From Bipalium vagum (lineage: Eukaryota): a DNA stretch of 34,134 bases. The position numbers and the translations under genes were made by a program. This document shows, in pieces, positions 1,045 to 34,024 of the stretch (position 1 is the first letter of the stretch; each line of letters begins with the position of its first letter). The notes under the pieces were generated by a model that searched no databases, was not told the DNA's origin, and saw only the letters and a list, made by a program, of their open reading frames with translations. The stretch covers positions 1-34,134 of the forward strand of contig JBBMKC010218353.1 in the NCBI GenBank assembly GCA_037834085.1, given 5' to 3'.

Positions 1045-4000
1045 GCTCTTTTGCTGTATGGTTCCGATGAACAGAAATCTTATTACTTACCCAAACTTGC
1101 AAGCGGAGAGTTACTCGGTGCTTTCTGTCTTACTGAAACGTCTAGTGGTAGCGATATGTTCAGTATGGAAACTATAGCATCTTTGAGTCCTTTTGAAGAT
1201 GGATATCTTCTACAAGGCACTAAAAATTGGGTTATCAATGGTCATGCTGCTGATGTTTACATAGTTTTTGCTATGACTAAAGATTCCATTCATGAGGTTG
1301 GCATAGGTTCAAGCCCACATATATCAATTATGTTTTTATCAGGGAGGTCGAGATTATATTACAGCATTGATCGTAGACAGATGTAGTGTAGGAGTTAAAA
1401 TTGGTGAAAAATACAACATTGATTGGTTGGAGAATTGCGAAGGTTCGTTTTTTGATGGAATCAAATTATTTTGAATTTAAAATTGTTAGTTGCTGACATT
1501 TCTTTCAATGAGACATTCATTCCAATTGATAAGGTGTTAGATGAAGCGAATGGTGGTTATAAAGTAAGTTTTATGTTTATTATTGATATTATCAATTTGA
1601 TTAGACTTATTATTTTATATTTTGGACTTCTTTACCATATGTTGATTTATTCGAAAAAATTAATAATTAAATTATTAGGTTAGTACATAAGTTCCCGCGT
1701 TTTTAAAAAATTATCATTCTTGTTATTTTTAGCTTTGTTTTGCTGAGCAAAAATAATTATTTTGAAAGCGCTTTTTTAAGCTACAAGCATGTAATCATTA
1801 TTCATTTAACAACTTAATTATACATTTATTTTTTAGCTCTACAAATTGGATATTCCAGGCAGCGAAAAAATTCATTTTCGGCATTTATTATATTTGGCCT
1901 TTGCCGTTATCAGAAAGCTACAGAAGCAGCACAAGACATTTGTGCTGTTTATGGAGCTAATGAAATAGGTGCGAGGACCGCTCAAGAATAGTACAACAAA
2001 TTCAAAAAGAGTAATTTTGATCTCGAAGATAAATTTCGCTCTGGTCGATCATCCGAATTCGACGAAGAACGTCTTCAGGAGCTTTTAAAGAAGAATGGTC
2101 GCCAAAAAACCAGAGAACTTGATGAAAAAATTTACTAGACTCATCCGACAATCCTCAGACACATTCATTCGATCGGCTTTGAGCAAAAATTTGTAGATTG
2201 GATACCTCATAAACTCAGTGAACAAGACAAAGAAAATAGTCTCCAAATCGCAGCACAACATCTTGCTCGGCACCGAGCGACATGCGGCCACACGGAATGA
2301 TTTCTGCAGAGAATCGTCACTGGATACGAGAAATGGTGTCTCTACTTCAATATGAGACAGAGGAAGGAGTGGGTCGCTAAAGGAGTCACGTCTAACCCAA
2401 GAGTAAAAAAAGAACTTCATCCCAAGAAAACAATGATATGTGTATGGTTGAACTGGGATGGTTTAGTACACGGTTTAGTACTTGAGAAAAATAAGACTAT
2501 TAAAAAAAAAACTCTTTGTAGCCAAGTTTCAAAGTGTGAACGAAGCTATCCAACTGAAAAGTTCAGATCGTCGCAGTCATGTCATTTTGCGTCATGACAA
2601 TGCACGGCCACACACAGCGAATATAGTGAAAATAGCCCTTCAAGAGCTCAAATGGGAGATTCTTCATCATCCGCCGTACTTTTCTGACCTTGTGCCAGCT
2701 GACTTTAACCTCTACCGCCCATTGTCCAATCAAATGAGGGGTGTGACATTCAATAACAAGGAGGATCTCAAAAACTGGCTCAACCAATTCTTCGAGATCG
2801 GACTGGCGATTTCTGGAGAAATGGTATCAAAAAATTGGCCGAGAGGTGGGAGCAGGTGGTGAACAATCACGGAGACTATATTACTGATTGATTTATTATT
2901 TTTAACATTAATAAAATAATAGTTGGTTTTCACAAAAAAATTTTCAATAAAAAAACTCGGGAACTTATGTACCAACCTAATATTTCTTACATATTTTATA
3001 ATTTATTTATTTTTATACTTTTACTTGTTTAGTGGATTTAGAATTATTGAATTTCTATTATTTTTAATAAATAATTTTTTTTAATATTATTATTAAAATC
3101 AATACTTTAATTTATTTCACATAATCCACGAAGCCTACTTTATTTTTTTGCATATTAATTGCTTACATTTGATTAATTTAAACAAAAATTACAATTTTTT
3201 CAAGAATTATTTCAAATGCGTTTAGATTTAATTTTTTTTAAAAAATCAATTCTCAATGTTTCCTCTTGTATGATAGACACGGTAAATCCCAATTCCAATT
3301 TAACGTTAATATTTTTTTAACCTAATTCCTTTTTCCTAACTATGATTTGTCTTAGATCGCCAATCATATCCAAAACAATGCCCGATTCATCGTGGCAGCC
3401 TGTATTTCTGGTATCACGCGGTACTTTATGAAAGATCTGATTACAAGAAAAAGTAACGGTCTCATTCCGAAAGATTCGTTGATTGATCATCTTATGAATG
3501 AGTGTATCACTTACTTGTATGCCATAGAGAGTGGGTTGTACTTTACCACGCGTTTTTCTGACTCCTATTTGATACCAGAGATCGAGCTGGAAAGCGCGGC
3601 GATTAAGGTTTTCGTTTCCAATTGATTTTTTTCTCAAATCACTCTCACAATGTTCAGGTATTCAGCATTGAAAGCGGTCTTAAATTGATGAAAAATTTCC
3701 AAAACATTTATTTGTTACTCGATCGATTCTCTACACCGAAATTTCAGAAATTATTTCACCGAGTAAATGGACTCCAGAGCTTTCTGGTAGGGAAAATAAA
3801 ATCGATCATCAGATTGTGACATGATTTACAACGTATGTCTAGGGTTCCAATTATTTCGTCAAGCTCTACATCGGAGGTACAATGGTGAAATTGTCGACCT
3901 TAAACATGATGGAGAACCAGAAAAAAATGAGACAACCATGGAATAATATTCCCTGGATGAAAGATGTTCTGAAGGATTCTTTGGAGCCAATCCATTGGAC

Positions 4001-5655
4001 AGAAGATATATCCAAACAGAATTATGTCTCGGTTTTAAAATACAGTCTGTTTTTGAGTGATCTCCGAAACATTTTCCGAAAATTACAAATGGCCAAGTTT
4101 TCTTTGGCTCGAGCAATCAAACTCCACGAAAATGTGAGTACATTTTTACTTGCAATTGAGCAGCAGTTACATTTAGTTGTGAAATCTTCCAGAAAACTCT
4201 TGAATATCAAAATATTATGGTGGCATTGTCGAATTTGGGAGAGATGTTTTACATTCTATCCACTTGTGTGGCGCGATCAAACACTACTTTCGGAGATTTC
4301 GAGGTATGATCTAATTGATATTTGATTGGTAGATCTATCAATTTTTATTGGTTTTATTTATTATAATTATTAACGTGAATGATTTTTCAGCTCTAACTTG
4401 AATTATCCTAAATCTTCAATTTATTTAAAATGATATTAATATAGGATTTCCGTGGTTTGACTAATTTTTTTCAATATTTTTATTTCGATATGATGGCATA
4501 AAATGAATTATAAAAAAACTTAGACCTAGCTAGGCGAGGCTAAACTTCATAGCCAAAGTTACGTGTATTTTTTTTGAGTAACTTTGAAGTTGTGCGGTCT
4601 AATGTTATCGTGAACGGAGAACATCCTTTCTGTTGACTAAATATGGGCGAGATAATCAACCAGTCACTCCAAATGTTGACAGTAACAATTTCAGATATAA
4701 GTTCGCCAAAATCAGTCCCCCCCCAAACCACAAAACATTTTTTACCATTTATAGGTCTACTTGCAGTTGTAATTGGAGTCTGTTTAGTAGAAAGCCATTG
4801 GCGATGATGATTATGACTCTCAAATAAAAACCAATTTTTACTGGAAGTGACAATTTTCTTCAAAAAATGGTTTTAGGTTTGTCTTATTAGATTTGCATTT
4901 GAAATCATAATCATCATAGACTTCTGCTGATTTGATAAATTGTTTTTGGTTTCATTCAATCCGTTCTTATAAAGTGATCAATTCTTGCACTAGAGCCCTG
5001 TTCAAATTCATACAGAAGACAGTGTCTTATTTGCAACCATATTTTGAAAATATCTAGTAACGATATTATTTAAACAAATATTTGATTAAATGTCCGTCTA
5101 ATAATTAAATCTAATTTTATTTATAAACTAATTTAATATCAATTAAGTGCGATTAAAATGGTACTTACAAAGCCACCTGTTTCTTTTCGGGCATCTAATA
5201 CCTATTATATATTATTGTATTATAATAATGTTTTATAAAACTTATTTAAAAATATTTACTTTTTCAAATAAATAATAAATAATAATAGAGAAATTTAAGT
5301 TTTGAAATATTTTCTTAAAATTAATGGATAAAGGTTCCTTAAAATACTTTCCAGTCTTGCTAAGAAAACTTATCATGAAAATTAAATTTAACAAGTCTTA
5401 ATTCTGGTAAATTTGCAGATCAAGTGCACGGAAAAAATTCTTCAAAAAACTCATTCAGTGATTGATGAAAGTCTAAAGATGCTACAATTGACTCTTGATG
5501 ATCCCGGTGAGATGTTATTGCACAATTTATCCAGCGATATAGCTCTAGCGAAAGGTTACCCACCACATGACATCTTGGAGATGAGAAGGGATTTGGCGAT
5601 GCCAGTTTCTAATCTCTTATCGTACGATGAATTCTATGTAAATAAAATAGATTAG
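1045..5655 (+). CDS. ACAD9: Acyl-CoA dehydrogenase family member 9-like / VLCAD-like, 5'-partial, 8 exons visible, probable pseudo-enzyme
   Basis: Phase-consistent GT-AG exons 1045-1296, 1343-1442, 1490-1563, 3356-3607, 3658-3786, 3843-4133, 4193-4303, 5419-5655 (TAG). Motifs LYGSDEQKSYYLPKLASGELLGAFCLTETSSGSD, GTKNWVING, ELESAAIKVF. ACAD9/VLCAD-type C-terminal extension (KTLEYQNIMVALSNLGEMFYILSTCVARS; LHNLSSDIALAKGYPPHDIL). No N-terminal exons found in the window. Confidence 0.88.
1675..2980 (+). mobile_element. Full-length but defective mariner (DD34D) transposon in ACAD9 intron
   Basis: 30-bp TIRs ttaggtt[a/g]gtacataagttcccg[c/a]gttttt (2 mismatches), TA on both flanks, 1306 bp. Transposase motifs HFRHLL, WIPHKL, IVTGYEKW, HDNARPH, HPPYFSDLVPADF, broken by stops and frameshifts. 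Confidence 0.95.
4540..5198 (-). mobile_element. Internally deleted mariner remnant in last ACAD9 intron
   Basis: Minus strand: IRHCLLYEF, FLKKIVTSSKNWFLFE..RQWL, and a DNIRPH (HDNARPH-like) segment. One TIR-like end (ta-ttagatgcccgaaaag) at about 5198. Confidence 0.75.
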
Positions 5656-9240: not shown

Positions 9241-9819
9241 ATTAGAAACTATTTATAAATGATTATATTTGAAGGATTTGGTACTATCAGTGTTCACAAT
9301 GAAATAATTATGTAATATGTATAAGTATAATGATATAATGTTTCTAATAAAATAGCTTTAAAAATTAATAGTTATCTTGCATTCAGCATATAAAACATTT
9401 AATTTTACAATTCATTCAAACTAATGACATACAATTAATTGATTTCGTTTCTTTTACTACAGAAATTTTTTAAAATTAATTTAAAATCATTTGTGTATGT
9501 TAACATAAATTAAAATTGAAATTATTAAAGTTTTAATGAATTTTTCTCATTTAATATTTATTGATCAAATCATTTAATAAAATTATTTTTCATCAAAAAA
9601 GAATTAATCGTAAAAATAATTTGAAACTAGTTTACAATTGAATAATGAATTAAAATTTAAAACTGCGAACAGACTTATTTATAAAAACATTGAAAGTTAA
9701 ATGTTTAAATCGGTTAAGATTCTTTAAAAGTTATTTAGGATAGTCTAATTACATGATTTTCTTAATTTTGTTTTAATTTATCTGAATAATTTTTTTAGTG
9801 TGATTTCCAAATTAATTGA

Positions 9820-10519
9820 ATGGAACTGGGTAAAATTGGGTCGAATTTGGTAAAAAGTGCCTTAGACTTAACCAAAACAACTCGCATTGATTCTTTTTGG
9901 AAGGTAAGTAAAAGATCTCTGAATCGTATATAAAATAATGTAAAGGAGTCGAGGTGCGTCATAACATTTTTCCGACGATTCGGATGATCTTACTGTAGAC
10001 TGGCTGCAAAGGTCCTCTCAGACATTACACCTATTCTGTTGTCACATAATGTGAGGAATATCGGAATCGGTTTAGAAGAACTGGGAGTTGAAGAATTTGT
10101 AGCCGGTCAATATTTTAATGGAGGTACGGTGATAAAAGCTGATCGAAGCACATTTTCTACCTCTATTTCCAGAGCTGTATGTAGATATTAACAAGAAATC
10201 GTTCGAACAACTCAATTTCAAAAACTATTCTCGCTTGGGATTGTTTGGTGCTCTGTTTTCCAGCTCTTCTCGGAACAATTACTCTGAAGCCCAGAAGTTT
10301 GGCGGAAATCTGAAAGGAGACGGATACCAGAACGGCGGAACGATCGTAACTGATGCCGGAGGATCCCTGCTCTATTTTTATAAGCAGGAAAACTTTGCTG
10401 ATCACGTCAAGAACGAGGACATTCTGAAAGCTCTGAACATCAGTGTAACTAGTAATGCTGATCCAGAGAAAGGTTCGCCAAAATTGTCTTGTGACGATAA
10501 CGCTTGTCATAGAAAATAG
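9820..10519 (+). CDS. PRXL2B: Selenoprotein U family (PRXL2B/FAM213B, prostamide/prostaglandin F synthase-like, AhpC-TSA_2 fold) with UxxC motif, 202 aa, Sec42
   Basis: Exons 9820-9903, 9946-10123, 10173-10519 (introns 42 and 49 nt, GT-AG) give MELGKIGSNLVKSA...FWKESRCVITFFRRFG[TGA]SYCRLAAKVLS...IGIGLEELGVEEFVAGQYFNGELYVD...GGNLKGDGYQNGGT...YKQENFADHV...SCDDNACHRK*. The only in-frame stop, TGA 9985-9987, aligns with the first Cys of the family RRFGCxxCR motif. SECIS in 3' UTR. Confidence 0.93.
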
Positions 10520-10530
10520 ATTATTAGGTT

Positions 10531-10598
10531 GTTAGATTCGGAAATGACTTTTCTGCTTGAAATTGTCTGAGCAGAAAATGATGTGAAAAGATTCTAAC
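10531..10598 (+). promoter_or_regulatory. Eukaryotic SECIS element (type I)
   Basis: Lower helix gttagattc/gattctaac. Core ATGAC (10544-10548) opposite TGAT (10579-10582). Upper helix ttttctgcttg/tgagcagaaaa (11 bp, two G-U). Apical loop AAAttgtc. Starts just after the stop codon of the TGA-containing gene. Confidence 0.92.
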
Positions 10599-22659: not shown

Positions 22660-25600
22660 TATTGAAGTTATATTCAGTAATCATGAATATTTTATTAAAT
22701 TTGGTTATAATTAGTAAGTGAAACAGTATTTCTTATTCATTATTTTTTTATAGTAAAAGGTTTTAATTTAAACAAAATATTGGTTTTTCAGACAGACAAA
22801 GCCTAACGTCTGAAGTATTCTATTGTCTATCGCAAAATGCAGAATTGAAATTTTCAAAGCTCAGCGAAATGAATATTGATCAAGTTAAATGGACCTTTAA
22901 TAATATTCCAATCAACGAAAATAACAGTAATATCCAATATATTATTTTACATAAATATAGCTTTTATATTTTTAATATTGTTTTGCAGAATTTGATATAC
23001 TCAATTATTATTATTTTATAAATATAATTATATATCAGTCTTTTCATTCGAACGATGATGGAGTTCAAGAAGTACTTCATGGGAAAAAATAATTGAGATT
23101 TCTGATTGAGGAGCACTGAAATTTTTATATCACTTGTTTCAATATTCCTTAAACACTTCAATAAAATTCAATTTTTTGTCATTTTATTAATAATTAATAA
23201 TTCCATCCGCCGTTTTGTTTAAATAAGAAACTTTCAAATCATGCCTGTAATTTATTTTGTCAATAATTAATAAAATAAATTTTATTATTTAAAATAGAAA
23301 AACTTTTTTCATTATTTTTCGCTGTAAGATTAAGTAAAAAATTAAAAAGACAATATATTTTATCACACTACTATGAAAATAAAATATAATAAAATAATAA
23401 AAAAATAATATAATAAATAAATAAATAATAAAATAAATTATAAGAAATAATGAAAATCTTTCATCTAGGGTCTAGGTAAATCATAAAAAATAATTTCTTT
23501 GAAAAAATATTAATATACGTCTTAATTTAATGTTAAAAAAAATATAAAAAATAATAAAATAATAATAATAATTATTATAAAAATAATAGGAATAATTAAA
23601 TATAAATTATTTGTAGACCAAGTTTTATTATTATATAAAAATCTAGAAGAGAAAAATTATTTTTGACAATGATGATGGAAAATAGTTCTTTATTCAAATA
23701 ATAAGATTTCAGATATATATAATTTTAATTTTATATATTTTAATTTTAATCAATTTTATTAAAGTTTTCGTCAATCGATAATTTGTTACTTTTAACTTAA
23801 ATCTCAACAAACAGATAAATAAATAAAAATATTTACTAATCACTAATATATTTTTACGTAAATATTTCTTTTTTATCATAATTAAAAATGATAACCAGTT
23901 TAATGTTTGATCCATTTACTTCAAAGATTTGCCGAAAATCCGAACCTTAGACAAAATTCTAATTAAACTTATTAATTAATTATTACAACTGAGGATTAAG
24001 CCTTTTTAATTAATGCTTCTTCGCATGATTTAAAGTCTACTTCGACGAAGAATTGATGGAGAAGATGTCTCTATGCACTTGACAAATGATTATGGAAATA
24101 AATAATCAACACTATGATTTCTTTTATTTTATTGAAATTTATGATAATGATATTTCTCAGGTAAATATCGAATTTTTACCACTGAATCTTATGGAATCTA
24201 TTTTGTGATCACAAATCTCGAAGAAAACGATTTCGGAGAATATTGTGCCCTGGACGAAAGAAAACAGGTTCTACAATCGTATATCATTGTTAAATCAGGT
24301 TTCCTTCACTAACCTTTAACTACGATTTCCATTGTTATATTTCAGATGCACCAACGTTCTTAAATTGTATTCCAAACCGAAGTTTGAATCTCCACGAAAA
24401 TCTATTTGTATCGGTGCAAATTGATGCTCAGCCAGCTCCAGATGTCGTTTGGAGAAGAAATTGGAAGAAAATATTTTCTAGCTATAGAACGGTCTTGGCG
24501 GAGGATAAGGAGAAATCTATGTATTCGTTATCAATTTCTAAATGTATGTTGTCGGATAGCGGTGAATACAGTATTCGAGCAGAAAACGTCGTAGGGTTTG
24601 CTGAAATGAAATTCACTTTACGTGTTGATGGTATGACCGGAAATAATGAAATGTCATTTCCCTTAAATTTTATTTAGCCCAACCAGAAAAAAGATCCATA
24701 CAAATCAATGAAGGAGATATCAATGACAGATACTACATCATGAAGCATTTATCGAGGTTAAAGGATAACATTATAAAAATGTTCATGTTAAGTTTTTTGA
24801 ACATTTGTTTTACAGAGGATCTTACAGTACATGTCAGATTTTGATTGAGAAGTCTACACAGAACGAATTTGTCGGAAAGTTCTTCGACATAAGCAATATG
24901 GGTATAGGGAAATCCGAATTCGAATGCATAAGAAATTTATATCAAAGAAATATAGTGGAAATATTTGATGCTATTATAATGCCAGATCAATATTTGGTTT
25001 TAATCTATGAAAAGTAAATCTAGATTATATGATCTTATGCATAGTTCATTGATTGATCGAATATTTGACAAATTATTAGGTTGTAAAGAAATAAACGGTG
25101 GTTTTTAACATTGAATTTGAAATGAAAAAATCACAGCTTAAACAAAATTTTATTTTTGAAAATAGAAACCATTACATTGTACACATATCTCCAAACGAGT
25201 CACAAGCTTATTTATCCAAATTTGATAATAATCTGAAATTCTAAGAGTTAAAAATATTCAAAGTCTTGAATGACAGCATTATCATTGGGGAAGGTTAGAA
25301 CAAATTTTCTCGATAACTCTCTTTTGAATGTCCTTAATTGTATGACTTTATCTCTTGATAGACAATTTAAATCATAGTTTGGATTATTTTGAAAACATTT
25401 TTTTGTTTTAAAGTGTTTAGAAAAAAAATTCTCAATAATCAAGAATGATTGAAATAACAAAACAATTAATTAATTATATACAATATCTATACATGATTCC
25501 ATTAGTTTCAGTAAAAAATATTATGAAAAAGAAAAGACACAATAAACGAGTCTAAGTCAATATTCTTCATGCTAATGTGAAACCACTCACAGCAAGTATT

Positions 25601-28600
25601 GGCAAAATTACTACACATAGGTGTTTCTTCAACGCTCTCCATATTCCCCGGTTAACGCTTCAACATATTTCTATCTTTTCCGCATGCTGTTTAACCAAAT
25701 GAAAAGCATAACTTTGAATAAATCTAGTGATTTCAAAAAACGTTTTGACAAGCACGTGGCAAGATAGAAGGTTCTAAATAATAACGGAAAATACATCGAT
25801 TGATTTTTCATTATTATTTATTAAAAAAGTGTTAAATTGCTCATAAAAAAAATAATATATATAATTCAAAATCATAAAAAATTATGTTACAACTTAATTA
25901 CAAAAGGGTTGTCATTAATTAATTGATGATTAATTTCTGACATAATTTATATTATAAAAACATTAGAAAACAATTTATATTATTATTTGATATTAGGCTA
26001 CAGGGTTGGCCGTTGGTCGAATATATGGCCAACCTAAATCATTGGTGTGAGACTCAAGCGAAAATTATTTTCCAGTCTCTAGTTCAAGCCGTTGCATTTT
26101 TGCATAGTAACGAAATCTGTCATTTAGATATAAAGGTTATTGTTTAAGCTTTTCTTTTGTATCAAGCTCACTTTTAATTAGCCGGAGAACATCATTATGA
26201 CGGGAAAATATCACGAAACTGTCAAGTTGTGTGGATTTTCCAATGCAGTGAAATCAGAAGATTTCGAAAACCGCCGACAAATGTTTCTAACGTCCCCATT
26301 CAGTGCCCCTGAATTGTTAAAAGGGGATCGGATAAGTTTTAAGTGTGATATGTGGTCAATAGGGATTTTAGCCTTTATATGGTAATTTTTTTGTTTATTA
26401 TACCAAAAAATGTGAGATCATTCAAATAATTATAGTCTTCATGGCCACACAAAAATAGATTTCAATGATGAGTTACGTGATAAGGATTCTGCCGACAGTG
26501 TAACCCAGTTTGCAAGCGATTTCGTTAAGAACTGTCTGACTTTAGAAAAGAAGTGGGTTCTTTATATTTTTATTCTCATTAATAAAAACTAAATGTCATT
26601 ATTTCATAATATTTTTTAATATTAAATATTCTCTACAGATAAAATTTCGTGATTTTAGTGTCATGAAATGATCCAAAAACGAACAGTACAAACTAAACAA
26701 TAACAAGTTATGATAATATATAATGACATTGTGTCTATTTATATTAAGAAAGTCCACAAATAACCTGACTCCATTTATCTATTATGGTTATGTTCGTTAT
26801 TGCCAAACACCGTTTTACGAAATAGAGTACGTCGGTTTAAAACTTTTATTTAAGCAAATCACAAAAGTATTAAAATCACAAATTGTTAATGTATTACACC
26901 TGGCGCTCAGCACATTCGTTTTAAAACCATCTTAAGATAAATATTAATGGCTTAACTACGTAATTGAGTAAAAATGGATGTGATTAAATGACTGGATATA
27001 AACAAATGATTAATATAATTTATAAAAACACGTTAAATACACAAGAAATATGAAAATAAAAAATATCAATAATGAACACTCTTATCTATTCTCTGACTAA
27101 TGTAACTTGATAATCTCAGCTTTTTATGGTTATCCATTAGATATCTAGCTCACCGATCCGAACATAATAAGACCTTTGAATAAAGTCCTGCTTTGCCACT
27201 GGTACAGAGCTACAGATAACCACTAATTTTTGTTAGATGGATTTTCATATATTATTCACTTTTCATATTCAATCACAATTCATTTGAAGAATGATTCCTT
27301 TAAATGTCAAATAAATAATAACTGACAAATTTGGACTGGATTTTTCTTCTGATCTGGAGTTAAATCATGAGAAACTCAAACACCACACCTCTTAATTTTT
27401 CCTATCCCTTTTATGTGATAGCCTACACTGCTAACATAATAATGTAATAGAGCAGAAAGTTATTCTAATGTTTGTCTAGAATAAAACATAGATTGTCGAT
27501 GCTCCAGTGGTTGTTATACAAACTGAGATTGCCTTTACGAAACCAGTCAAACTTTTTAGCATCTGCGAACATCTAGCATTTTACCTTAAACATTGATATT
27601 TTTGGTGACAACAGTGGCATTTGATCCCGGTTTAAACTCATACAGCATAAAATGACTAATATGAACGTCATTTTCTAAATTTTCATTCATTTCTTAATAG
27701 ATTAAATAAATTTAATTTGAAAATTTTTTATGATTGTTTATACTTGTCATCGATCATTGATTTTAAATTGAATTTAATATTTGCTTATTATGAACGATAT
27801 AAACAATATTAAAACAACGATATTAAATATTATTAGAAAAACGAACTTTCAATTTGAAAACCATAATATATTATTATTTATTGAACTTATTTTTGTTTTA
27901 ATTTTTAATAATCATTTTTAATTATTAAATTTTGAATTAACTAAAAAATATGAATTTCAATTTATTAGATGTACAACTATGACTCCAGCTTTTTAAAAAT
28001 AAGAAAACAAAGACATTTTTTACATTTTATTTGAAAAAATTTATTGAAAATTTGTTCCATTGGAAGCTACAACCTTTGCCCACATTTCAGGTAACGAACG
28101 CATTCCATGAAAGATAAACTCTGGCTCTTTTGATGAAATCCAGCTGTCAATTCAATTTTGTAGGTCTTCAAGGGAACTGAACCGCTTTCGGGAAAGTGCT
28201 GATTGCAAAGAACAGAAAAAATGGTAATCCGAAGGAGCGATGTCTGGTGAATAGGGCGGGTGACGTAAAACTTCCCACTTTGTACTTTCTAATTAATTAT
28301 TTACAACTGAATTAATGTGTAAAATGCGTTATCATGTTGCAAAATTATCTTTTCACGTCTAATCACCTATTCCGGTCGTTTTTCATTCAAAGCTTGCTTC
28401 AAACAAATTAATTTTGATCGATAAAGTTCACCAGTTAGTGTTTGAGAAGATTTTAAAAATTCATAATAGATCACTCCTTTCTGATCCCACCAGATACACA
28501 ACATAACTTTCAAACCGTGGACTATTTGTTTCGGTGTTGATGGACCGAGTTCACCTGGTATCACCCAAGCTGCTTTGCGTTTTGGATTGTCATAAAGAAT

Positions 28601-31600
28601 CTATTTTTCGTCTCCTGTGATAACTCGATGCAAAAATCTTTTCCTTTTTTGTCTCTGAAGAAGGACATCACAAATTTTATTTCGCTGTTCAATTCATCTT
28701 TCTGTAAATTCATGTGGGCTCCGATTTCCTAATTTTCGAATAATTCCTAAAGTTGCCAGACGTTTCGAAATGCATTGTTGAGTCACATTTAATGCGACAA
28801 CCAGACCAGATTGTGTTTGGCATGGAACAGCTTTCTCAAATCTCTATCTTCACATTGTTTTTGTGGCCTCCCATGATCGTTGTCGTTCGTATCATAAAGG
28901 GCCATTTCTAAAACGGCAAAAACCAATCTATATATGTGGTCATCGAAGCAAAATGTTCTCCATAGGTATCTTGAAGCAAGCGGTACGTTTCCGCTGCAGT
29001 TTTCTTGGCAATAAAGTAATGTAGAACTAGTTCCGCAAATGTCGTTTATTTGGGATGAATAAACAAGGAATATTAAAACAACTGTCTCGTGATATTATTA
29101 ATTATATGATATTTTTGTTTATAAATCAATTCAATATAATTTAGATACATATGCAAACAAAATTTTTATTATCATTTAAAAAATAAGCCGGAGTCATTGT
29201 TGTACACCTAATATTATATATTTTATAATATATTCAATAATTTATTAGATATTTTAATTAATTAATTTTCATTTCCTCTTTTCTGATTAAAATGTTATAT
29301 TTAAAGAAAAGTGTTCTTTTTCTATAAGGAAAAACTTATTCTTCTGACGAAAAACAATAACTTAAATATAATAATAATAATGTAACAGAATCAATAAATT
29401 GATCGAAAACTAAAGACATTCTCTATAAATCAATTATTAAACTTTCCTTCTTTTATACATCATTAACTTAAAACTGGGGTGATTGCGTTGAAGACATGGT
29501 TAAGTTGATTTCAAGCGAAATTTCTTCTATCTTCTGCTATGAGCATTTTAATGGAAATCCTTTTCAAGATTTTTCCTATTTTTACGTATAAAGAATGTCA
29601 ATTAGCAATCACAGCTAAGGCAAACATTTAAACAAAAAATTATAAAGCCCATCTTATTTTCGTTTAGATGAGATTATATTGAGGTTTGTTCAAGAAGTTT
29701 AGGTGGATAAAGTTATATTAAGTTATATTAAGTCACCTGAAAAACAGATGTTCTGAGATGTTCATCTGAATTCTCAAAAAACAAAACATAATCACAAATC
29801 GGATGTCCATATTTATATAGTACAATTATTATTAAAATCTTTGAAGAAAATATATTGCATAATGTAATAATTTCTATTTTTTACTAAATAAATAATATTA
29901 ATAATAATTAATTATTTAGTGCTGTTCAATGATGAGAAATGAGGATTTCCAATGACAGAGTCAACTCACATTATCTTAGTTATTCCTCGTATTTTTGTTC
30001 CTGTTTTTTTTCATTTCTTTTACATTTATGTATATTTCCTTTCTTAGAAAGTTATTTTTCAAAATATTTTGAACAATTAAGCTATTATTATATAATAAAA
30101 ATGTTTTAAAGATTCATTATACAGGTTGCGTTCGATAAATTGGCAAAAAATGTTTGCTTTTGTAAGAAAATTATTATACATAATAATAAATCAATTAAAT
30201 TATTGATTAAATAATAATCATTGATAATCAGTAATAATCAATATTAAATTATTAATTTTTCATAATTTTATTATAAAAATATTGAAATGAAATTAGTTCA
30301 ATTGTTTGTTTTAATATTTTTGTCTTAAAATAAGTACTAAGTTGTTACATAAGCATTATCGTTTATTATAGAACACTTTAAGCAAAAAAATGAACGGACA
30401 GGTATATTAATATTAAAAAATAAATGGTAATTAAATCCTATTCACACCCGAACGTCTATCGCAAACAACAGTATTCATGATTTAAGATTTATAATATGTT
30501 TTTGGTTGGATATAGGAGGAATTGTAAAAACCAACTTTAGAAAAAGATAAACAGATAAGTGGTAACGAAATTTTTTGAAAATTTGAAAATTGAATGATGA
30601 ATTAATCAAAACATGTCTGAATATCAAGCAAAATATCTCTAATCTTCAAGCAAGTCGTGTTAGGTCTGAAATGAAAGCTGTTCGCATCGCATTCTCCTCC
30701 CAGAATCAGCGCCTGATAGTTTTTTTTAATGAGACCAATGTTAACACAAATTTTAAAAATTTGGCCCGTGATAGATTAATTATTAAGTTCTATTTTACTG
30801 ATGTTGGAATATTTATGTTGTCGAATTTCTGAGAGGTTATGTTGAACGAAATAAAATATTTTCATTCATTTCAATGTATTATTTTGTCCACAAATTAATA
30901 TTTAAGTCCAGATAATATTTATTTCAACAGATTTTTGATTATTTTATTTAGTAAAAATGACTGAACTTTTATTTCAGCCTGCGTATCTCGTCCATGGAAG
31001 CGGTTGGTCATCAATGGTTTACAAACAAGGGTTTTTCCTTAAGTACTTCCCTGGACTACCTCTTAGATACCATAGTTAAATTAATGAAATATCCAGAAGA
31101 AATGGTTTCTCAAAATATTTTCTCTAATTTTATGCAAAGTTTCTTAGGTGACACATTTTCCAGATGATATAAAAAATGCTATTGAAACATCCATAATAAG
31201 TTCTAGACCAAAAGTTATTTTCGATAACTCTATGTTAAATGTCGAAGATTATCCAAGTCCGGCAGTAAGTCAGTTGTCGTCTAGGGCATCATCAGCATCA
31301 AGAGATGGAATAAAGTTAGTTATTTAAACAATACTGTATTTTCCTTATTGATTAAGATTGTACTTCCATATTGTAAGTTCAATATAAAAAAATAATTATT
31401 TAAATAATAATAATAATAATGACAATAAAAATTAACATATAACGTAGTATTTTATGATAATACACAAAAGACAATTATTGAAATTTAATATAGATAAAGA
31501 ATTGTTACGTTTATACCTCTATCAGAACTGCATAACACTTTTCTAATGACTTTAATGTCTCCTTTATGTTAATAACCTGTTCGATTGTAATTGAATCAAA

Positions 31601-32798
31601 ATAATTACGATAAATCTTTATTTAATCTATGTAGCAGTACACTAGCAAAATCACTTTGCGAGAAAATGTGATCAATAAAAGTAGAAAATAAATCAATCAA
31701 AATTCTAATTCAACTGTCACATAAAAAAATTCAATCAAATAAATATGAATTGTTAAGATATTGATCAAAGTCCAAATGGATTCTCTCATAAATGACAAAA
31801 ACTGTAAGGACTCTGTTGACTCCTGTCGAATAGAAAATATCATAATCTTAAAATCTTACAAAAATATTTGAATATAATCTTCTTCCGACTTAGTTCGTAA
31901 TATACAGACATTTTTTCAGACGTAAAATGTAATTTTAAAGTCTAAAATTTTCTGGGCAGTCCATTGAGGACTCCGTCGACTCTTACATTGACTACTTAGT
32001 CATATACCAATATTTTTATCTGAAGTCAATTCACTTTTTAGGCAAAAATTTAGTAATTGGCTACTAACTACGGAACTGATTTAATCTTAACAATTCAACA
32101 TTGACAAGATTAGAAAAGCTCCAAAAATATTTTATAATTATTATTAATTATTTAATTATTATTAATTTTAATTTTTAATTATTATTATTATTATTAAAAT
32201 TTAATAATAATTTCTTCAGTTATGAAAGATGTGATCCATTAAAAGATAACTCGGTGGATGACGGCTCTTCGGAACGAAAAGAAATCTTTCCAAGTGTAGA
32301 TAGAAATACAGTCAAAAACACTAAGAAAGGTTTGCTAATTATATTAGTAACACATTTAAATTATTATATTAGAACTTTTATTTACTGTTCCTTTAAAAGA
32401 CCAAACTTTTAAAGGAGGATCAATTGGCAGTAGAATTACAGTTACCCTGACTTGTCAGCTAGCTCTTTTAGGAAGCGAACCGATTAGCATTTCTTGGTAT
32501 AAGAATCAAGAACTGTTGTCGGACGATTCAAAAATAAAACTTGAAGTCATAAAAGGAGGCTTCCTTTCATGCACTATTTTAAGTGCATCTGACAATGATG
32601 TAGGCATATACAAATGTGTTGCTAGATGTCATTCTCTTAGAGCTGAAACCTGTGCAAGATTGATACTTGGAGATATTCCAACCCCTCCAGAACAACTTTT
32701 GGTATATTATATAAATGAACAAGAGGTCTTATTGAAATGGAATCCCTATTTTTTGGCGATCGATGACATCATCTATAGGGTTGATGTGAAAGTCATTG
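18287..32798 (+). CDS. unc-89: Obscurin/UNC-89/SPEG-like muscle protein, partial: Fn3-Ig-Ig-kinase1 (pseudokinase)-interkinase-Ig-Fn3
   Basis: Phase-consistent exons 18287-18613 (Fn3), 18665-18709, 22792-22926 and 24161-24298 (Ig), 24346-24630 (Ig), 24678-24756, 24816-25013, 25997-26135, 26182-26381, 26436-26552, 30978-31104 (CAMK/MLCK-type kinase: FVGK, HLDIKPEN, APE, DMWSIG, HQWF), 31148-31314, 32220-32329, 32373-32798 (Ig + TCARLILGDIP + Fn3 start). This domain order matches the UNC-89/obscurin dual-kinase region. Both gene ends are missing. Confidence 0.85.
19550..20079 (+). mobile_element. hAT (Charlie/Buster-like) 3' end fragment
   Basis: FSHLTILNTKRPERPRNVEEKMRIAISNLRLDIEKLCKNHQLEVSN* resembles the Buster/Charlie C terminus. 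Terminal aagtttaagaaccactg (reverse complement cagtggttcttaaactt) is a typical Charlie TIR. Confidence 0.75.
20092..21313 (+). mobile_element. Near full-length defective mariner in obscurin intron
   Basis: About 31-bp imperfect TIRs ttgggttgtctaaaaagtttccgccgatttt / aaaatcggcagaaacattttggacaactcaa, TA flanks. Motifs KPKLTPRKVMLYIW, HDDNGRLH, LLHPPYSADFAPSDYYLFRSL. Confidence 0.92.
22583..22657. repeat. (TAA)n microsatellite, about 25 units
   Basis: Perfect trinucleotide run. An imperfect related tract lies at about 22250-22350. Confidence 0.95.
25076..25897 (+). mobile_element. Internally deleted mariner in obscurin kinase intron
   Basis: Degenerate TIRs ttaggttgtaaa.. / ..gttacaacttaa. Motifs ILHANVKPL (HDNARPH-like), SPYSP, YLFRML, NNGKYID*. 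Confidence 0.7.
27060..27700 (-). mobile_element. Decayed mariner 5' half
   Basis: Minus strand: HISHFMLYEFK.GSNAT, WFRKGNLSL, VSHDLT, FFK*IVIEYEK*IIYENP. Confidence 0.7.
27965..29211 (-). mobile_element. Full-length defective Mos1-like (mauritiana-type) mariner
   Basis: TIRs ttaggtgtacaacaatgactccggctt / ttagatgtacaactatgactccagctt, TA flanks, 1247 bp. Motifs KKTAAETYRLL, FLHRVITGDEK, KVMLCIWWDQKGVIYYE, HPPYSPDIAPSDYH. Contains stops and frameshifts. Confidence 0.95.
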
Positions 32799-34024
32799 GT
32801 AATACTGAGTTATTTTTGTAAAATAAATTTTAAAGCTCCACAAAATGTTTGAGTACTACTTTAAAAATGTGGAAATAATTTTTAACAAAAAATTAAATAA
32901 ATTTTAAGTAAAATTTTCACCTGATTTTAATAATAAAATAGATATTTATGTTACTGTTTTTCTATACTTTGAAAGAAATTATAAAATTAAAAATTGAAAC
33001 AAATTTTTAGTTAAACAAAACAATTTAAAGCAGATTTTTTATTAAAAAATAATTTTGTGAAAATTAATATTTTCCATTCAATTGATAAATATGGAAATAG
33101 ACAAACATTCTTAAATGTATTGATATCTGTTTTGTGATATACTGGGTGCCTAGGGTATTTGAGGACTTAAGTTTAATGTCAACACAATTTTGTCTGCATA
33201 TTAGTTATTGACACGCTATCGATATTGTTCGAGTTCATAAGTCTCAATTGAACGTAATATTCATTTCACATAAAATTTGAGAAGTTAAAAAACGCTCTCC
33301 CTTTATTTAATTTTTAAAAAAATAATGATGTGAATATATTTTCAAAAAATTTTCATTATAAAACTAATTAATTATATATTATAAAAATTAATATTATTAA
33401 TTATTATTATTAATATTATTATTATTACCCATTGAAGTTATTTTAAATTCTCAACATCATTAATATTTTGAATCGAGTTTCACATGCACACACTACACAA
33501 TGGCAAAATGTTATTTTTAGGAAATTCTCATTTTTATTATAAAACATTATGAAATATTACATATCATAAATGTACAAATAAAATACTATAATGTATATAT
33601 ATTTATTTATATATATAATGAAATCTCATCTAATTACACTTATTTTGTTAAAAAATATTGGCTGAAATATAAAATATAAAAGTTTGTTAACTTGCTTTTG
33701 TTAGCAACTGTAACTAACGAATATTAAATACTGTATATCAAGCCCAAATTTTATATTGATTTTTCGTATTAATTATCTTCCCAAGTACGGAATTAAGAAA
33801 TATAACGAATCAATTTGTAATACAAAATTATAGAATATATAATTTAGTAAAAACAATTGCAAAACTAATACTTGAATTGGAAAATAATACTAAGGAAAGT
33901 ATAATTACCCATCCTGTTACAGAAATAAGGAAAATCTTTCGGATTTGGCAAAATCATAAGGAGTTATTTCTCTGAATAAGTCTTACTACACCTTTTAATT
34001 TAATTTTTTTCTAATACATAGTAT

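What the first reader, a model, noticed from the sequence alone, without database searches (positions are those of the whole stretch)
10531..10598. Canonical type I SECIS immediately after the stop codon
Seen: AUGA core, 11-bp upper helix, unpaired AAA in an 8-nt loop, opposing UGAU, and a 9-position lower helix with one mismatch. It lies about 0.5 kb downstream of the UGA in the spliced mRNA. This is independent RNA-level evidence that the TGA is sense and not a pseudogenising mutation.
Basis: partly seen in the sequence, partly recalled or inferred. Interest (0 to 1): 0.75.

Follow-up and report, generated by a model that had tools for sequence, protein, structure and literature searches.

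The report
SECIS hairpin of a SelU selenoprotein gene
This is an ordinary but genuine-looking selenocysteine insertion hairpin sitting right behind the stop codon of a peroxiredoxin-like (SelU/PRXL2B-type) gene, and it explains why that gene's internal TGA is read as selenocysteine rather than as a stop.

Summary
It has an AUGA core (10544-47), an 11-bp upper helix, an 8-nt loop starting AAA, UGAU opposite, and a 9-position lower helix with one mismatch. It starts 11 nt after the TAG stop and lies about 510 nt of spliced mRNA after the TGA at 9985-87.

- **Chance:** it is the only strict SECIS-pattern hit in the window. Shuffles give 0.19 hits per window.
- **Copy number:** it is single-copy in the genome.
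- **Rfam:** SECIS_1 is the best family, but at 19.9 bits against a cut-off of 35, and only when the hairpin alone is scanned.
- **Own model:** a covariance model built from six other SECIS of this genome, this one excluded, ranks it first in the window (28.3 bits, E 0.002).
- **Gene:** three exons, AhpC-TSA_2 domain. The TGA sits where relatives have the first Cys of CxxC. Eight of 8 environmental relatives with that site visible also have TGA there, and several carry SECIS elements that Rfam recognises.
- **Machinery:** the genome has tRNA-Sec, SepSecS, SelD/SPS, and Sec-type GPx, Sep15, SelM-like and SelS-like genes.

No RNA data exist, so expression and the poly(A) site are untested. Sec-containing SelU is already in print for invertebrates, so this is a new member of a known kind. 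The scan had noted this gene on the same window (s1-751371).

The parts
9820..9903 (+). Exon 1 of the SelU/PRXL2B-like gene (ATG to the GT donor at 9904)
   Evidence: The 28-aa N-terminus is collinear by eye with the start of homologue P0027.
9946..10123 (+). Exon 2, carrying the redox motif with in-frame TGA
   Evidence: The pieces on either side of the TGA align to P0027 residues 29-41 and 43-87. Weak AhpC-TSA_2 match.
9985..9987 (+). TGA read as selenocysteine (UxxC)
   Evidence: It falls on residue 42 (Cys of RRFGCAFCR) of P0027. Eight of 8 metagenome relatives have TGA at the same site.
10173..10519 (+). Exon 3 (AG acceptor at 10171-72) up to and including the TAG stop at 10517-19
   Evidence: Pfam PF13911 AhpC-TSA_2, E 9.9e-9. 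Closest solved structure is prostamide/prostaglandin F synthase, E 1.7e-10.
10531..10598 (+). Whole SECIS element, form 1
10531..10539 (+). Lower helix (helix I), 5' arm
   Evidence: Pairs with 10590-10598, with one T/T mismatch at 10537/10592.
10544..10547 (+). AUGA core, 5' half of the non-Watson-Crick quartet
   Evidence: Aligned to the AUGA of Rfam SECIS_1 and of models R2 and R3.
10549..10559 (+). Upper helix (helix II), 5' arm, 11 nt
   Evidence: Pairs with 10568-10578 with no mismatch, two pairs being G-U.
10560..10567 (+). Apical loop AAAUUGUC, with unpaired AAA at 10560-62
   Evidence: The AAA aligns to the conserved AAA of SECIS_1.
10568..10578 (+). Upper helix, 3' arm
10579..10582 (+). 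UGAU, 3' half of the quartet (GA at 10580-81)
10590..10598 (+). Lower helix, 3' arm
10892..10897 (+). First canonical AATAAA after the stop, a candidate poly(A) signal (inferred only)
   Evidence: No AATAAA or ATTAAA lies between 10401 and 10891. No RNA data.

Best explanation
The hairpin at 10531-10598 is the SECIS element of a three-exon, roughly 202-codon SelU/PRXL2B-type (peroxiredoxin-like 2, AhpC-TSA_2) selenoprotein gene.

**Shown here:** the structure, its position, the UxxC codon, the family, and the presence of tRNA-Sec, SepSecS and SelD/SPS in the genome.

**Inferred from established knowledge of eukaryotic Sec decoding:** the AUGA/GA quartet forms a kink-turn that binds SECIS-binding protein 2. 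That protein recruits eEFSec carrying Sec-tRNA(Sec) to ribosomes reaching the UGA about 510 nt upstream. Selenocysteine is then inserted as the first residue of the UxxC redox centre, and translation continues to the TAG 11 nt before the hairpin.
For: - **Anatomy:** complete and canonical.
- **Chance:** the only strict-pattern hit in 68 kb of window strands, against 0.19 expected per shuffle. The same pattern gave no spurious hit in 88 kb of other strands of this genome.
- **Copy number:** single-copy, so not a repeat.
- **Rfam:** SECIS_1 is the best of 4,227 families on the hairpin, full length 1-64, with AUGA, AAA and UGAU in register.
- **Own models, this element excluded:** R2, from 2 SECIS of this genome, gives 21.6 bits, E 0.0095, rank 1 of 30. 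R3, from 6 SECIS, gives 28.3 bits, E 0.0022, rank 1 of 30, with the next hit at 19.3.
- **The TGA:** it aligns with the catalytic Cys of relatives. The frame stays open for 45 codons in exon 2 and 115 in exon 3 after it.
- **Relatives:** 8 of 8 with the site visible have TGA. Rfam finds SECIS_1 downstream in 6 of 16 relative loci, 4 over the cut-off.
- **Machinery:** tRNA-Sec at 75.9 bits with anticodon TCA, SepSecS, SelD/SPS.
- **Other Sec genes with SECIS-like hairpins downstream on the same strand:** GPx, Sep15, SelM-like and SelS-like.
Against: - The Rfam score is 15 bits under the curated cut-off, and the hit appears only when 78 bases are scanned. It is absent.
- No RNA run holds the locus, so transcription, splicing and the poly(A) site are unverified.
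- No close relative was available, so there is no covariation test of this particular hairpin.
- E-values of my models are rough because calibration was shortened.
- The apical loop (8 nt) is shorter than the Rfam consensus, with 4 inserted nt where the model expects 11.
- SBP2 and eEFSec were not looked for.
Confidence: 0.86

Rival explanations
1. A chance AT-rich hairpin that happens to fit the SECIS pattern, with the TGA being a nonsense mutation in a decaying gene.
For: Rfam is below its cut-off. Seventeen of 100 shuffled windows contain some strict-pattern hit somewhere. The fold z-score is only -2.2.
Against: The chance rate is about 0.19 per 68,000 strand positions. A hit on the right strand within 100 nt after this stop is therefore expected about 3 times in 10,000 (my arithmetic). 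The TGA sits exactly on the redox Cys and is shared by 8 of 8 relatives. No other stop or frameshift occurs in the three exons and the splice sites are intact. The element ranks first with independent models.
Confidence: 0.04
2. A true SECIS by descent that no longer works, or works poorly, so the gene mostly yields a 55-residue truncated peptide or is degraded by nonsense-mediated decay.
For: The apical loop is short and helix II is AU-rich with two G-U pairs. There is no expression evidence.
Against: All invariant positions are intact, and the upper helix has no mismatch. The coding sequence downstream of the TGA shows no decay and keeps family motifs, including the C-terminal Cys pair.
Confidence: 0.08
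3. Another kink-turn RNA, such as a C/D-box snoRNA-like element, lying by chance in this 3' region.
For: There are weak matches to SNORD42 (17.3 bits, + strand) and SNORD111 (15.4 bits, - strand).
Against: Both are far below their cut-offs (39 and 46 bits) with E-values of 1.5 to 7. SECIS_1 scores higher on the hairpin alone. UGAUGA-type words are shared by both RNA kinds (recalled knowledge).
Confidence: 0.02

Closest known systems
Eukaryotic SECIS element, Rfam RF00031 (SECIS_1), form 1 / type I
   Same: AUGA...GA quartet, 11-bp helix II, unpaired AAA at the 5' side of the apical loop, a lower helix, and a 3'UTR location. It aligns over the full model 1-64.
   Different: It scores 19.9 bits against a gathering score of 35. 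The apical loop is shorter and the helix AU-rich. Its base is only 11 nt from the stop codon.
SECIS elements of Sec-containing SelU (SelU1-3, including the prostamide/PGF synthase-like subfamily) in marine invertebrates and the planarian Schmidtea mediterranea (PMC3473315, PMC3828610; passages read)
   Same: Same protein family, same UxxC position, and an AUGA_AA type SECIS in the 3'UTR. My own metagenome relatives show the same arrangement.
   Different: No sequence similarity between the hairpins. In the three relatives where both the stop and the SECIS were located, the core lies about 96 to 351 nt after the stop, against 25 nt here. The papers' SECIS figures are in supplements that I could not see.
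Sep15 SECIS of the same genome (L019:999-1074)
   Same: AAAAUGAC...UGAUG core words and an 11-nt helix II. It also starts right after the stop, with an 8-nt gap.
   Different: That one has a mini-stem above the AA bulge (form 2). The SelU element has a plain 8-nt loop (form 1).
Coding-region SECIS elements shown to be functional (PMC1802603; title and abstract seen in a search listing only)
   Same: They show that a SECIS close to or inside translated sequence can still work, so the 11-nt gap is no obstacle in principle.
   Different: Here the element is wholly outside the reading frame.

Membership tests
Eukaryotic SECIS (RF00031) | Quartet: (A)UGA on the 5' side opposite GA on the 3' side | tested here: met
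   ATGA at 10544-47 and TGAT at 10579-82, in register with the model.
Eukaryotic SECIS (RF00031) | Helix II of about 9-13 bp between the quartet and the unpaired AA | tested here: met
   11 bp, 10549-59 with 10568-78, no mismatch.
Eukaryotic SECIS (RF00031) | Unpaired AA(A) in the apical loop or bulge | tested here: met
   AAA at 10560-62, at the 5' side of the 8-nt loop.
Eukaryotic SECIS (RF00031) | Lower helix below an internal loop | tested here: met
   10531-39 with 10590-98, 8 of 9 positions paired.
Eukaryotic SECIS (RF00031) | Score at or above Rfam's gathering cut-off (35 bits) | tested here: not met
   19.9 bits. For comparison, of six other SECIS candidates of this genome one reached 38.1, three reached 20.0-27.1 and two were not reported. 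The curated model is therefore insensitive in this AT-rich genome.
Eukaryotic SECIS (RF00031) | Lies in the 3'UTR of an mRNA with an in-frame UGA at a known Sec site, at least about 50-110 nt downstream of it (spacing rule recalled) | tested here: met
   By gene model only: about 510 nt after the TGA at 9985-87 and 11 nt after the stop. There is no transcript evidence.
Eukaryotic SECIS (RF00031) | Resembles other SECIS of the same organism | tested here: met
   Rank 1 in the window with R2 (21.6 bits) and R3 (28.3 bits), both built without it.
Eukaryotic SECIS (RF00031) | Conserved with compensatory changes in orthologues | tested here: inconclusive
   No relative close enough was found; the best are 55-60% identical over part of the protein. 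Relatives do have SECIS elements, but these cannot be aligned to this one.
Eukaryotic SECIS (RF00031) | Binds SBP2 and supports Sec insertion | not testable with these tools
   Needs a bench assay.
SelU / peroxiredoxin-like 2 (PRXL2B-type) selenoprotein | AhpC-TSA_2 (PF13911) thioredoxin-like domain | tested here: met
   Exon 3 matches at E 9.9e-9, 36 bits, over the cut-off of 27. The exon 2 piece is weak, 13.5 bits. Matches PDB prostamide/PGF synthase at E 1.7e-10.
SelU / peroxiredoxin-like 2 (PRXL2B-type) selenoprotein | Sec (or Cys) as the first residue of the CxxC/UxxC motif after RRFG | tested here: met
   The TGA falls on Cys42 of P0027. TGA is at the same site in 8 of 8 relatives.
SelU / peroxiredoxin-like 2 (PRXL2B-type) selenoprotein | Subfamily assignment (PRXL2A, 2B or 2C) by phylogeny | not tested
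   Only the nearest solved structure (PRXL2B-type) and the length of about 202 codons point to 2B. No tree was built.

The most novel reading that the evidence does not exclude
Stop-abutting SECIS elements may be a trait of this lineage and not an accident. In two of the selenoprotein genes examined (SelU, 11-nt gap; Sep15, 8-nt gap) the lower helix begins within the stretch that a terminating ribosome covers. Each termination event would then have to open the base of the SECIS. That could couple termination or recycling to reloading of the SECIS-binding complex, or it could simply mark extreme 3'UTR compaction tolerated by the Sec machinery.
Probability: 0.1. Interest if true: 0.5.

Novelty: new member of a known kind. 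Interest (0 to 1): 0.25.

Why it matters
It settles the annotation of this gene: the TGA at 9985-87 is a selenocysteine codon, and the gene is intact, not a pseudogene or a truncated ORF. Many database relatives look like they were cut at exactly this codon, since several start one or two residues after it.

It also shows that this unnamed AT-rich animal keeps a working-looking Sec system and a moderately rich selenoproteome. Rfam's SECIS model under-calls in such genomes, passing one of seven candidates. A small species-specific model or a structural pattern does better. Beyond that, it adds nothing new to how selenocysteine decoding is understood.

Tried and rejected
**Steps that led nowhere**
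1. Rfam at gathering on the whole window gave 0 matches. At E<=10 on 351 nt there was no SECIS among 4 matches. The hit appeared only on 78 nt and vanished again in batches of 585 and 251 nt. I read this as an effect of the speed filters, not as evidence of absence.
2. Genome-wide RF00031 scored only 129 of 10,278 candidates and gave 1 sub-threshold match, the SelS-like gene. A genome-wide search with my model R3 scored only 150 of about 1,057,874 candidates and returned one training member. Neither can list the selenoproteome.
3. MAFFT alignments of the six SECIS (A1) and of three (A2) were not consistent with the structure, so I dropped them.
4. A single-sequence model R1 found only itself plus noise.
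The single-protein scan worked.
7. No RNA run holds the locus. Read laying on the one DNA-type run only confirms the letters.
8. The search for homologous proteins gave only 2 short hits because of its length window.
9. The protein atlas returned only the family name.
This is not a typical SL1-using nematode, and the taxon stays unknown.
11. No CxxU exon was found within the fetched flanks of the two Rdx/SelT-like genes, so their Sec codons are unverified.
12. SBP2, eEFSec and PSTK were not searched.
13. The joined spliced protein was never searched, aligned or folded.
14. Supplements of PMC3473315, which hold the SelU SECIS figures, were not opened.
It was sent again with that field added.

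Full report
**The observation.**
- The lower helix pairs 10531-39 with 10590-98, 9 positions with one T/T mismatch.
- The internal loop has 4 nt on the 5' side and 7 nt on the 3' side.
- ATGA lies at 10544-47.
- The upper helix pairs 10549-59 with 10568-78, 11 bp including two G-U pairs.
- The loop is AAATTGTC, 8 nt, with AAA first. TGAT lies at 10579-82.

RNAfold gives just this shape as the minimum-energy fold (-18.9 kcal/mol, z -2.21, 2 of 200 shuffles as stable). With no mini-stem above the AAA it is a form-1 (type I) SECIS.

**Is it more than chance?** I wrote a strict SECIS pattern and found one core in the whole window on both strands, this one. One hundred dinucleotide-preserving shuffles gave a mean of 0.19 cores, and 17 of 100 shuffles had at least one. 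From that rate, a hit on the right strand within 100 nt behind a given stop codon is expected about 3 times in 10,000 (my arithmetic). In 17 other loci of the same genome (44,148 bases, both strands) the strict pattern hit only twice, both behind selenoprotein genes. It is therefore specific in real sequence of this composition. The 141 bases around the hairpin occur once in the 440-Mb assembly, so it is not a repeat or a transposon end. A contig of the one public run that holds the locus matches 9700-10900 without a difference. That run is probably the assembly's own source, so this excludes an assembly slip at the TGA but is not an independent sample.

**The gene.** The model has three exons:
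- exon 1, 9820-9903;
- a 42-nt GT-AG intron;
- exon 2, 9946-10123, with TGA at 9985-87;
- a 49-nt GT-AG intron;
- exon 3, 10173-10519, ending in TAG.

That makes 609 nt, or 202 codons plus the stop. Exon 3 matches Pfam AhpC-TSA_2 (E 9.9e-9) and, among solved structures, prostamide/prostaglandin F synthase (E 1.7e-10). The two pieces of exon 2 on either side of the TGA align without a gap to residues 29-41 and 43-87 of a 206-aa homologue. The TGA therefore falls on residue 42, the first Cys of RRFGCAFCR. Among the 1.84 billion representatives, 273 proteins match exon 3 at E<=0.001, the best at 36-52% identity. Several start one or two residues after this very position (P0003, P0025, P0013, P0015). 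That is the usual mark of selenoprotein genes cut at the UGA by gene callers.

**Scores from RNA models.** Rfam's SECIS_1 is the best of 4,227 families when the hairpin alone is scanned. It scores 19.9 bits at E 0.051 over the full model, with AUGA, AAA and UGAU in register. That is 15 bits under the curated cut-off, and the hit is lost in larger scans.

To judge what that means here, I collected SECIS candidates behind other selenoprotein genes of the same genome:
- a GPx with TGA at the catalytic site;
- Sep15 (CG-TGA);
- a SelM-like gene (CGG-TGA);
- two Rdx/SelT-like genes;
- a SelS-like gene ending in TGA-GGA-TAA.

Rfam gave them 38.1, 27.1, 24.2 and 20.0 bits, and reported nothing for Sep15 and GPx. 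Only one of seven candidates in this genome passes the cut-off, so 19.9 bits is within the local range.

I then built covariance models of the core and helix II without the SelU element. R2, from the Sep15 and one Rdx SECIS, ranks the SelU hairpin first in the window at 21.6 bits, E 0.0095, with the next hit at 15.5. That is higher than it scores the four other candidates (14.3 to 9.3 bits). R3, from all six (alignment A7), gives 28.3 bits, E 0.0022, rank 1 of 30. The next hit, at 19.3 bits, is an A/T hairpin at 23156-85. E-values of these models are rough.

**The machinery.** The genome has:
- a tRNA-Sec gene, 75.9 bits against a cut-off of 47, called tRNA-SeC with anticodon TCA by ARAGORN;
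- a four-exon SepSecS gene;
- SelD/SPS exons;
- three GPx genes with TGA and one with Cys.

SBP2, eEFSec and PSTK were not searched.

**Relatives elsewhere.** A metagenome scan with exon 3 returned 16 loci.
- In the 8 where the active-site exon is readable (L036-L040, L046-L048), the codon after RRFG is TGA in all 8.
- My looser pattern finds a SECIS downstream on the same strand in 9 of 16 loci (L036, L037, L041-L045, L048, L049). A still looser scan adds L038 and perhaps L046.
- Rfam reports SECIS_1 in 6 of 16 loci, 4 at or above the cut-off (35.5-35.8 bits). L041-L045 are near-identical and count as one lineage.
- In L039, L040, L047, L050 and L051 I found none. These contigs are short or may end before the element.
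- In the three relatives where both the stop and the SECIS were located, the core lies about 96 to 351 nt after the stop, against 25 nt here.

**What is known.** Sec-containing SelU of all three subfamilies, including the prostamide/PGF synthase-like one, has been described with AUGA_AA SECIS elements in sponge, cnidarian, placozoan, mollusc, annelid and amphioxus (PMC3473315; passages read). It has also been described in the planarian Schmidtea mediterranea, with Cys forms in parasitic flatworms (PMC3828610; passages read). Caenorhabditis has a Cys form (PMC4114682; one passage read). SECIS elements even inside coding sequence are reported to work (PMC1802603; title and abstract in the listing only). 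I did not search the literature for stop-to-SECIS spacing.

**Verdict.** This is the SECIS of an intact SelU/PRXL2B-type selenoprotein gene, a new member of a known kind. What remains inferred is expression, the transcript's 3' end and actual Sec insertion, because no RNA run holds the locus. The one mildly unusual feature is how close the hairpin sits to the stop codon. The Sep15 gene of the same genome shares this, with an 8-nt gap. The organism was not identified. It is an AT-rich animal genome (window 16-39% G+C per kb) with introns of 42-49 nt in this gene and no canonical nematode SL1.

Noticed in passing
L001:1497-1660 (minus strand; G000:C23711): A SelS-like gene whose reading frame ends ...GGG-TGA-GGA-TAA, so Sec would be the penultimate residue. 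A form-2 SECIS core lies about 60 nt downstream. This was the only genome-wide Rfam SECIS_1 match (24.2 bits).
   Followed up: partly
L019:771-1074 (G000:C183253): A Sep15 gene with a CG-TGA motif. Its SECIS lower helix starts 8 nt after the TAA stop at 990-992, the same stop-abutting layout as the SelU gene.
   Followed up: partly
L009, L010, L012, L008 (G000:C199131, C223928, C209931, C151800): Three glutathione peroxidase genes with TGA at the catalytic site and one with Cys. A SECIS-like hairpin was found only behind the first. The flanks of the other two were short, or their SECIS deviates from my pattern.
   Followed up: partly
window 10490-10507: A C-terminal Cys pair (C-DDNA-C) just before the stop. 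A similar CxxxxC or CxxxC pair near the C-terminus is seen in 10 of the 17 homologues read. It may be a second, resolving redox centre.
   Followed up: no
window 2352-2975: Remains of a mariner/Tc1-like transposase on the + strand, apparently inside an intron of the acyl-CoA dehydrogenase-like gene that occupies about 1050-5650. The family name is my reading of the ORF translations, not a tool result.
   Followed up: no
window 23156-23185 (minus strand): AAAAUGAC...UGAAG inside a pure A/T hairpin with almost no loop. It is the second-best hit of model R3 (19.3 bits, E 0.12). It lies in a 16-17% G+C stretch and is most likely chance.
   Followed up: no
window about 18100-18240: A run of 142 N, an assembly gap or mask. 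It was left as it is.
   Followed up: no
L048:3532-3577 and 5384-5429 (minus strand): Two histone 3' stem-loops (Rfam 36.6 and 33.9 bits) next to a SelU relative on a metagenome contig. Histone genes neighbour that relative.
   Followed up: no
window 15583-16521 and 18304-33000: Cys-rich secreted-looking ORFs, then a long run of Ig/FN3-like exons that resembles a giant muscle kinase-type gene. These were seen only as ORF translations.
   Followed up: no
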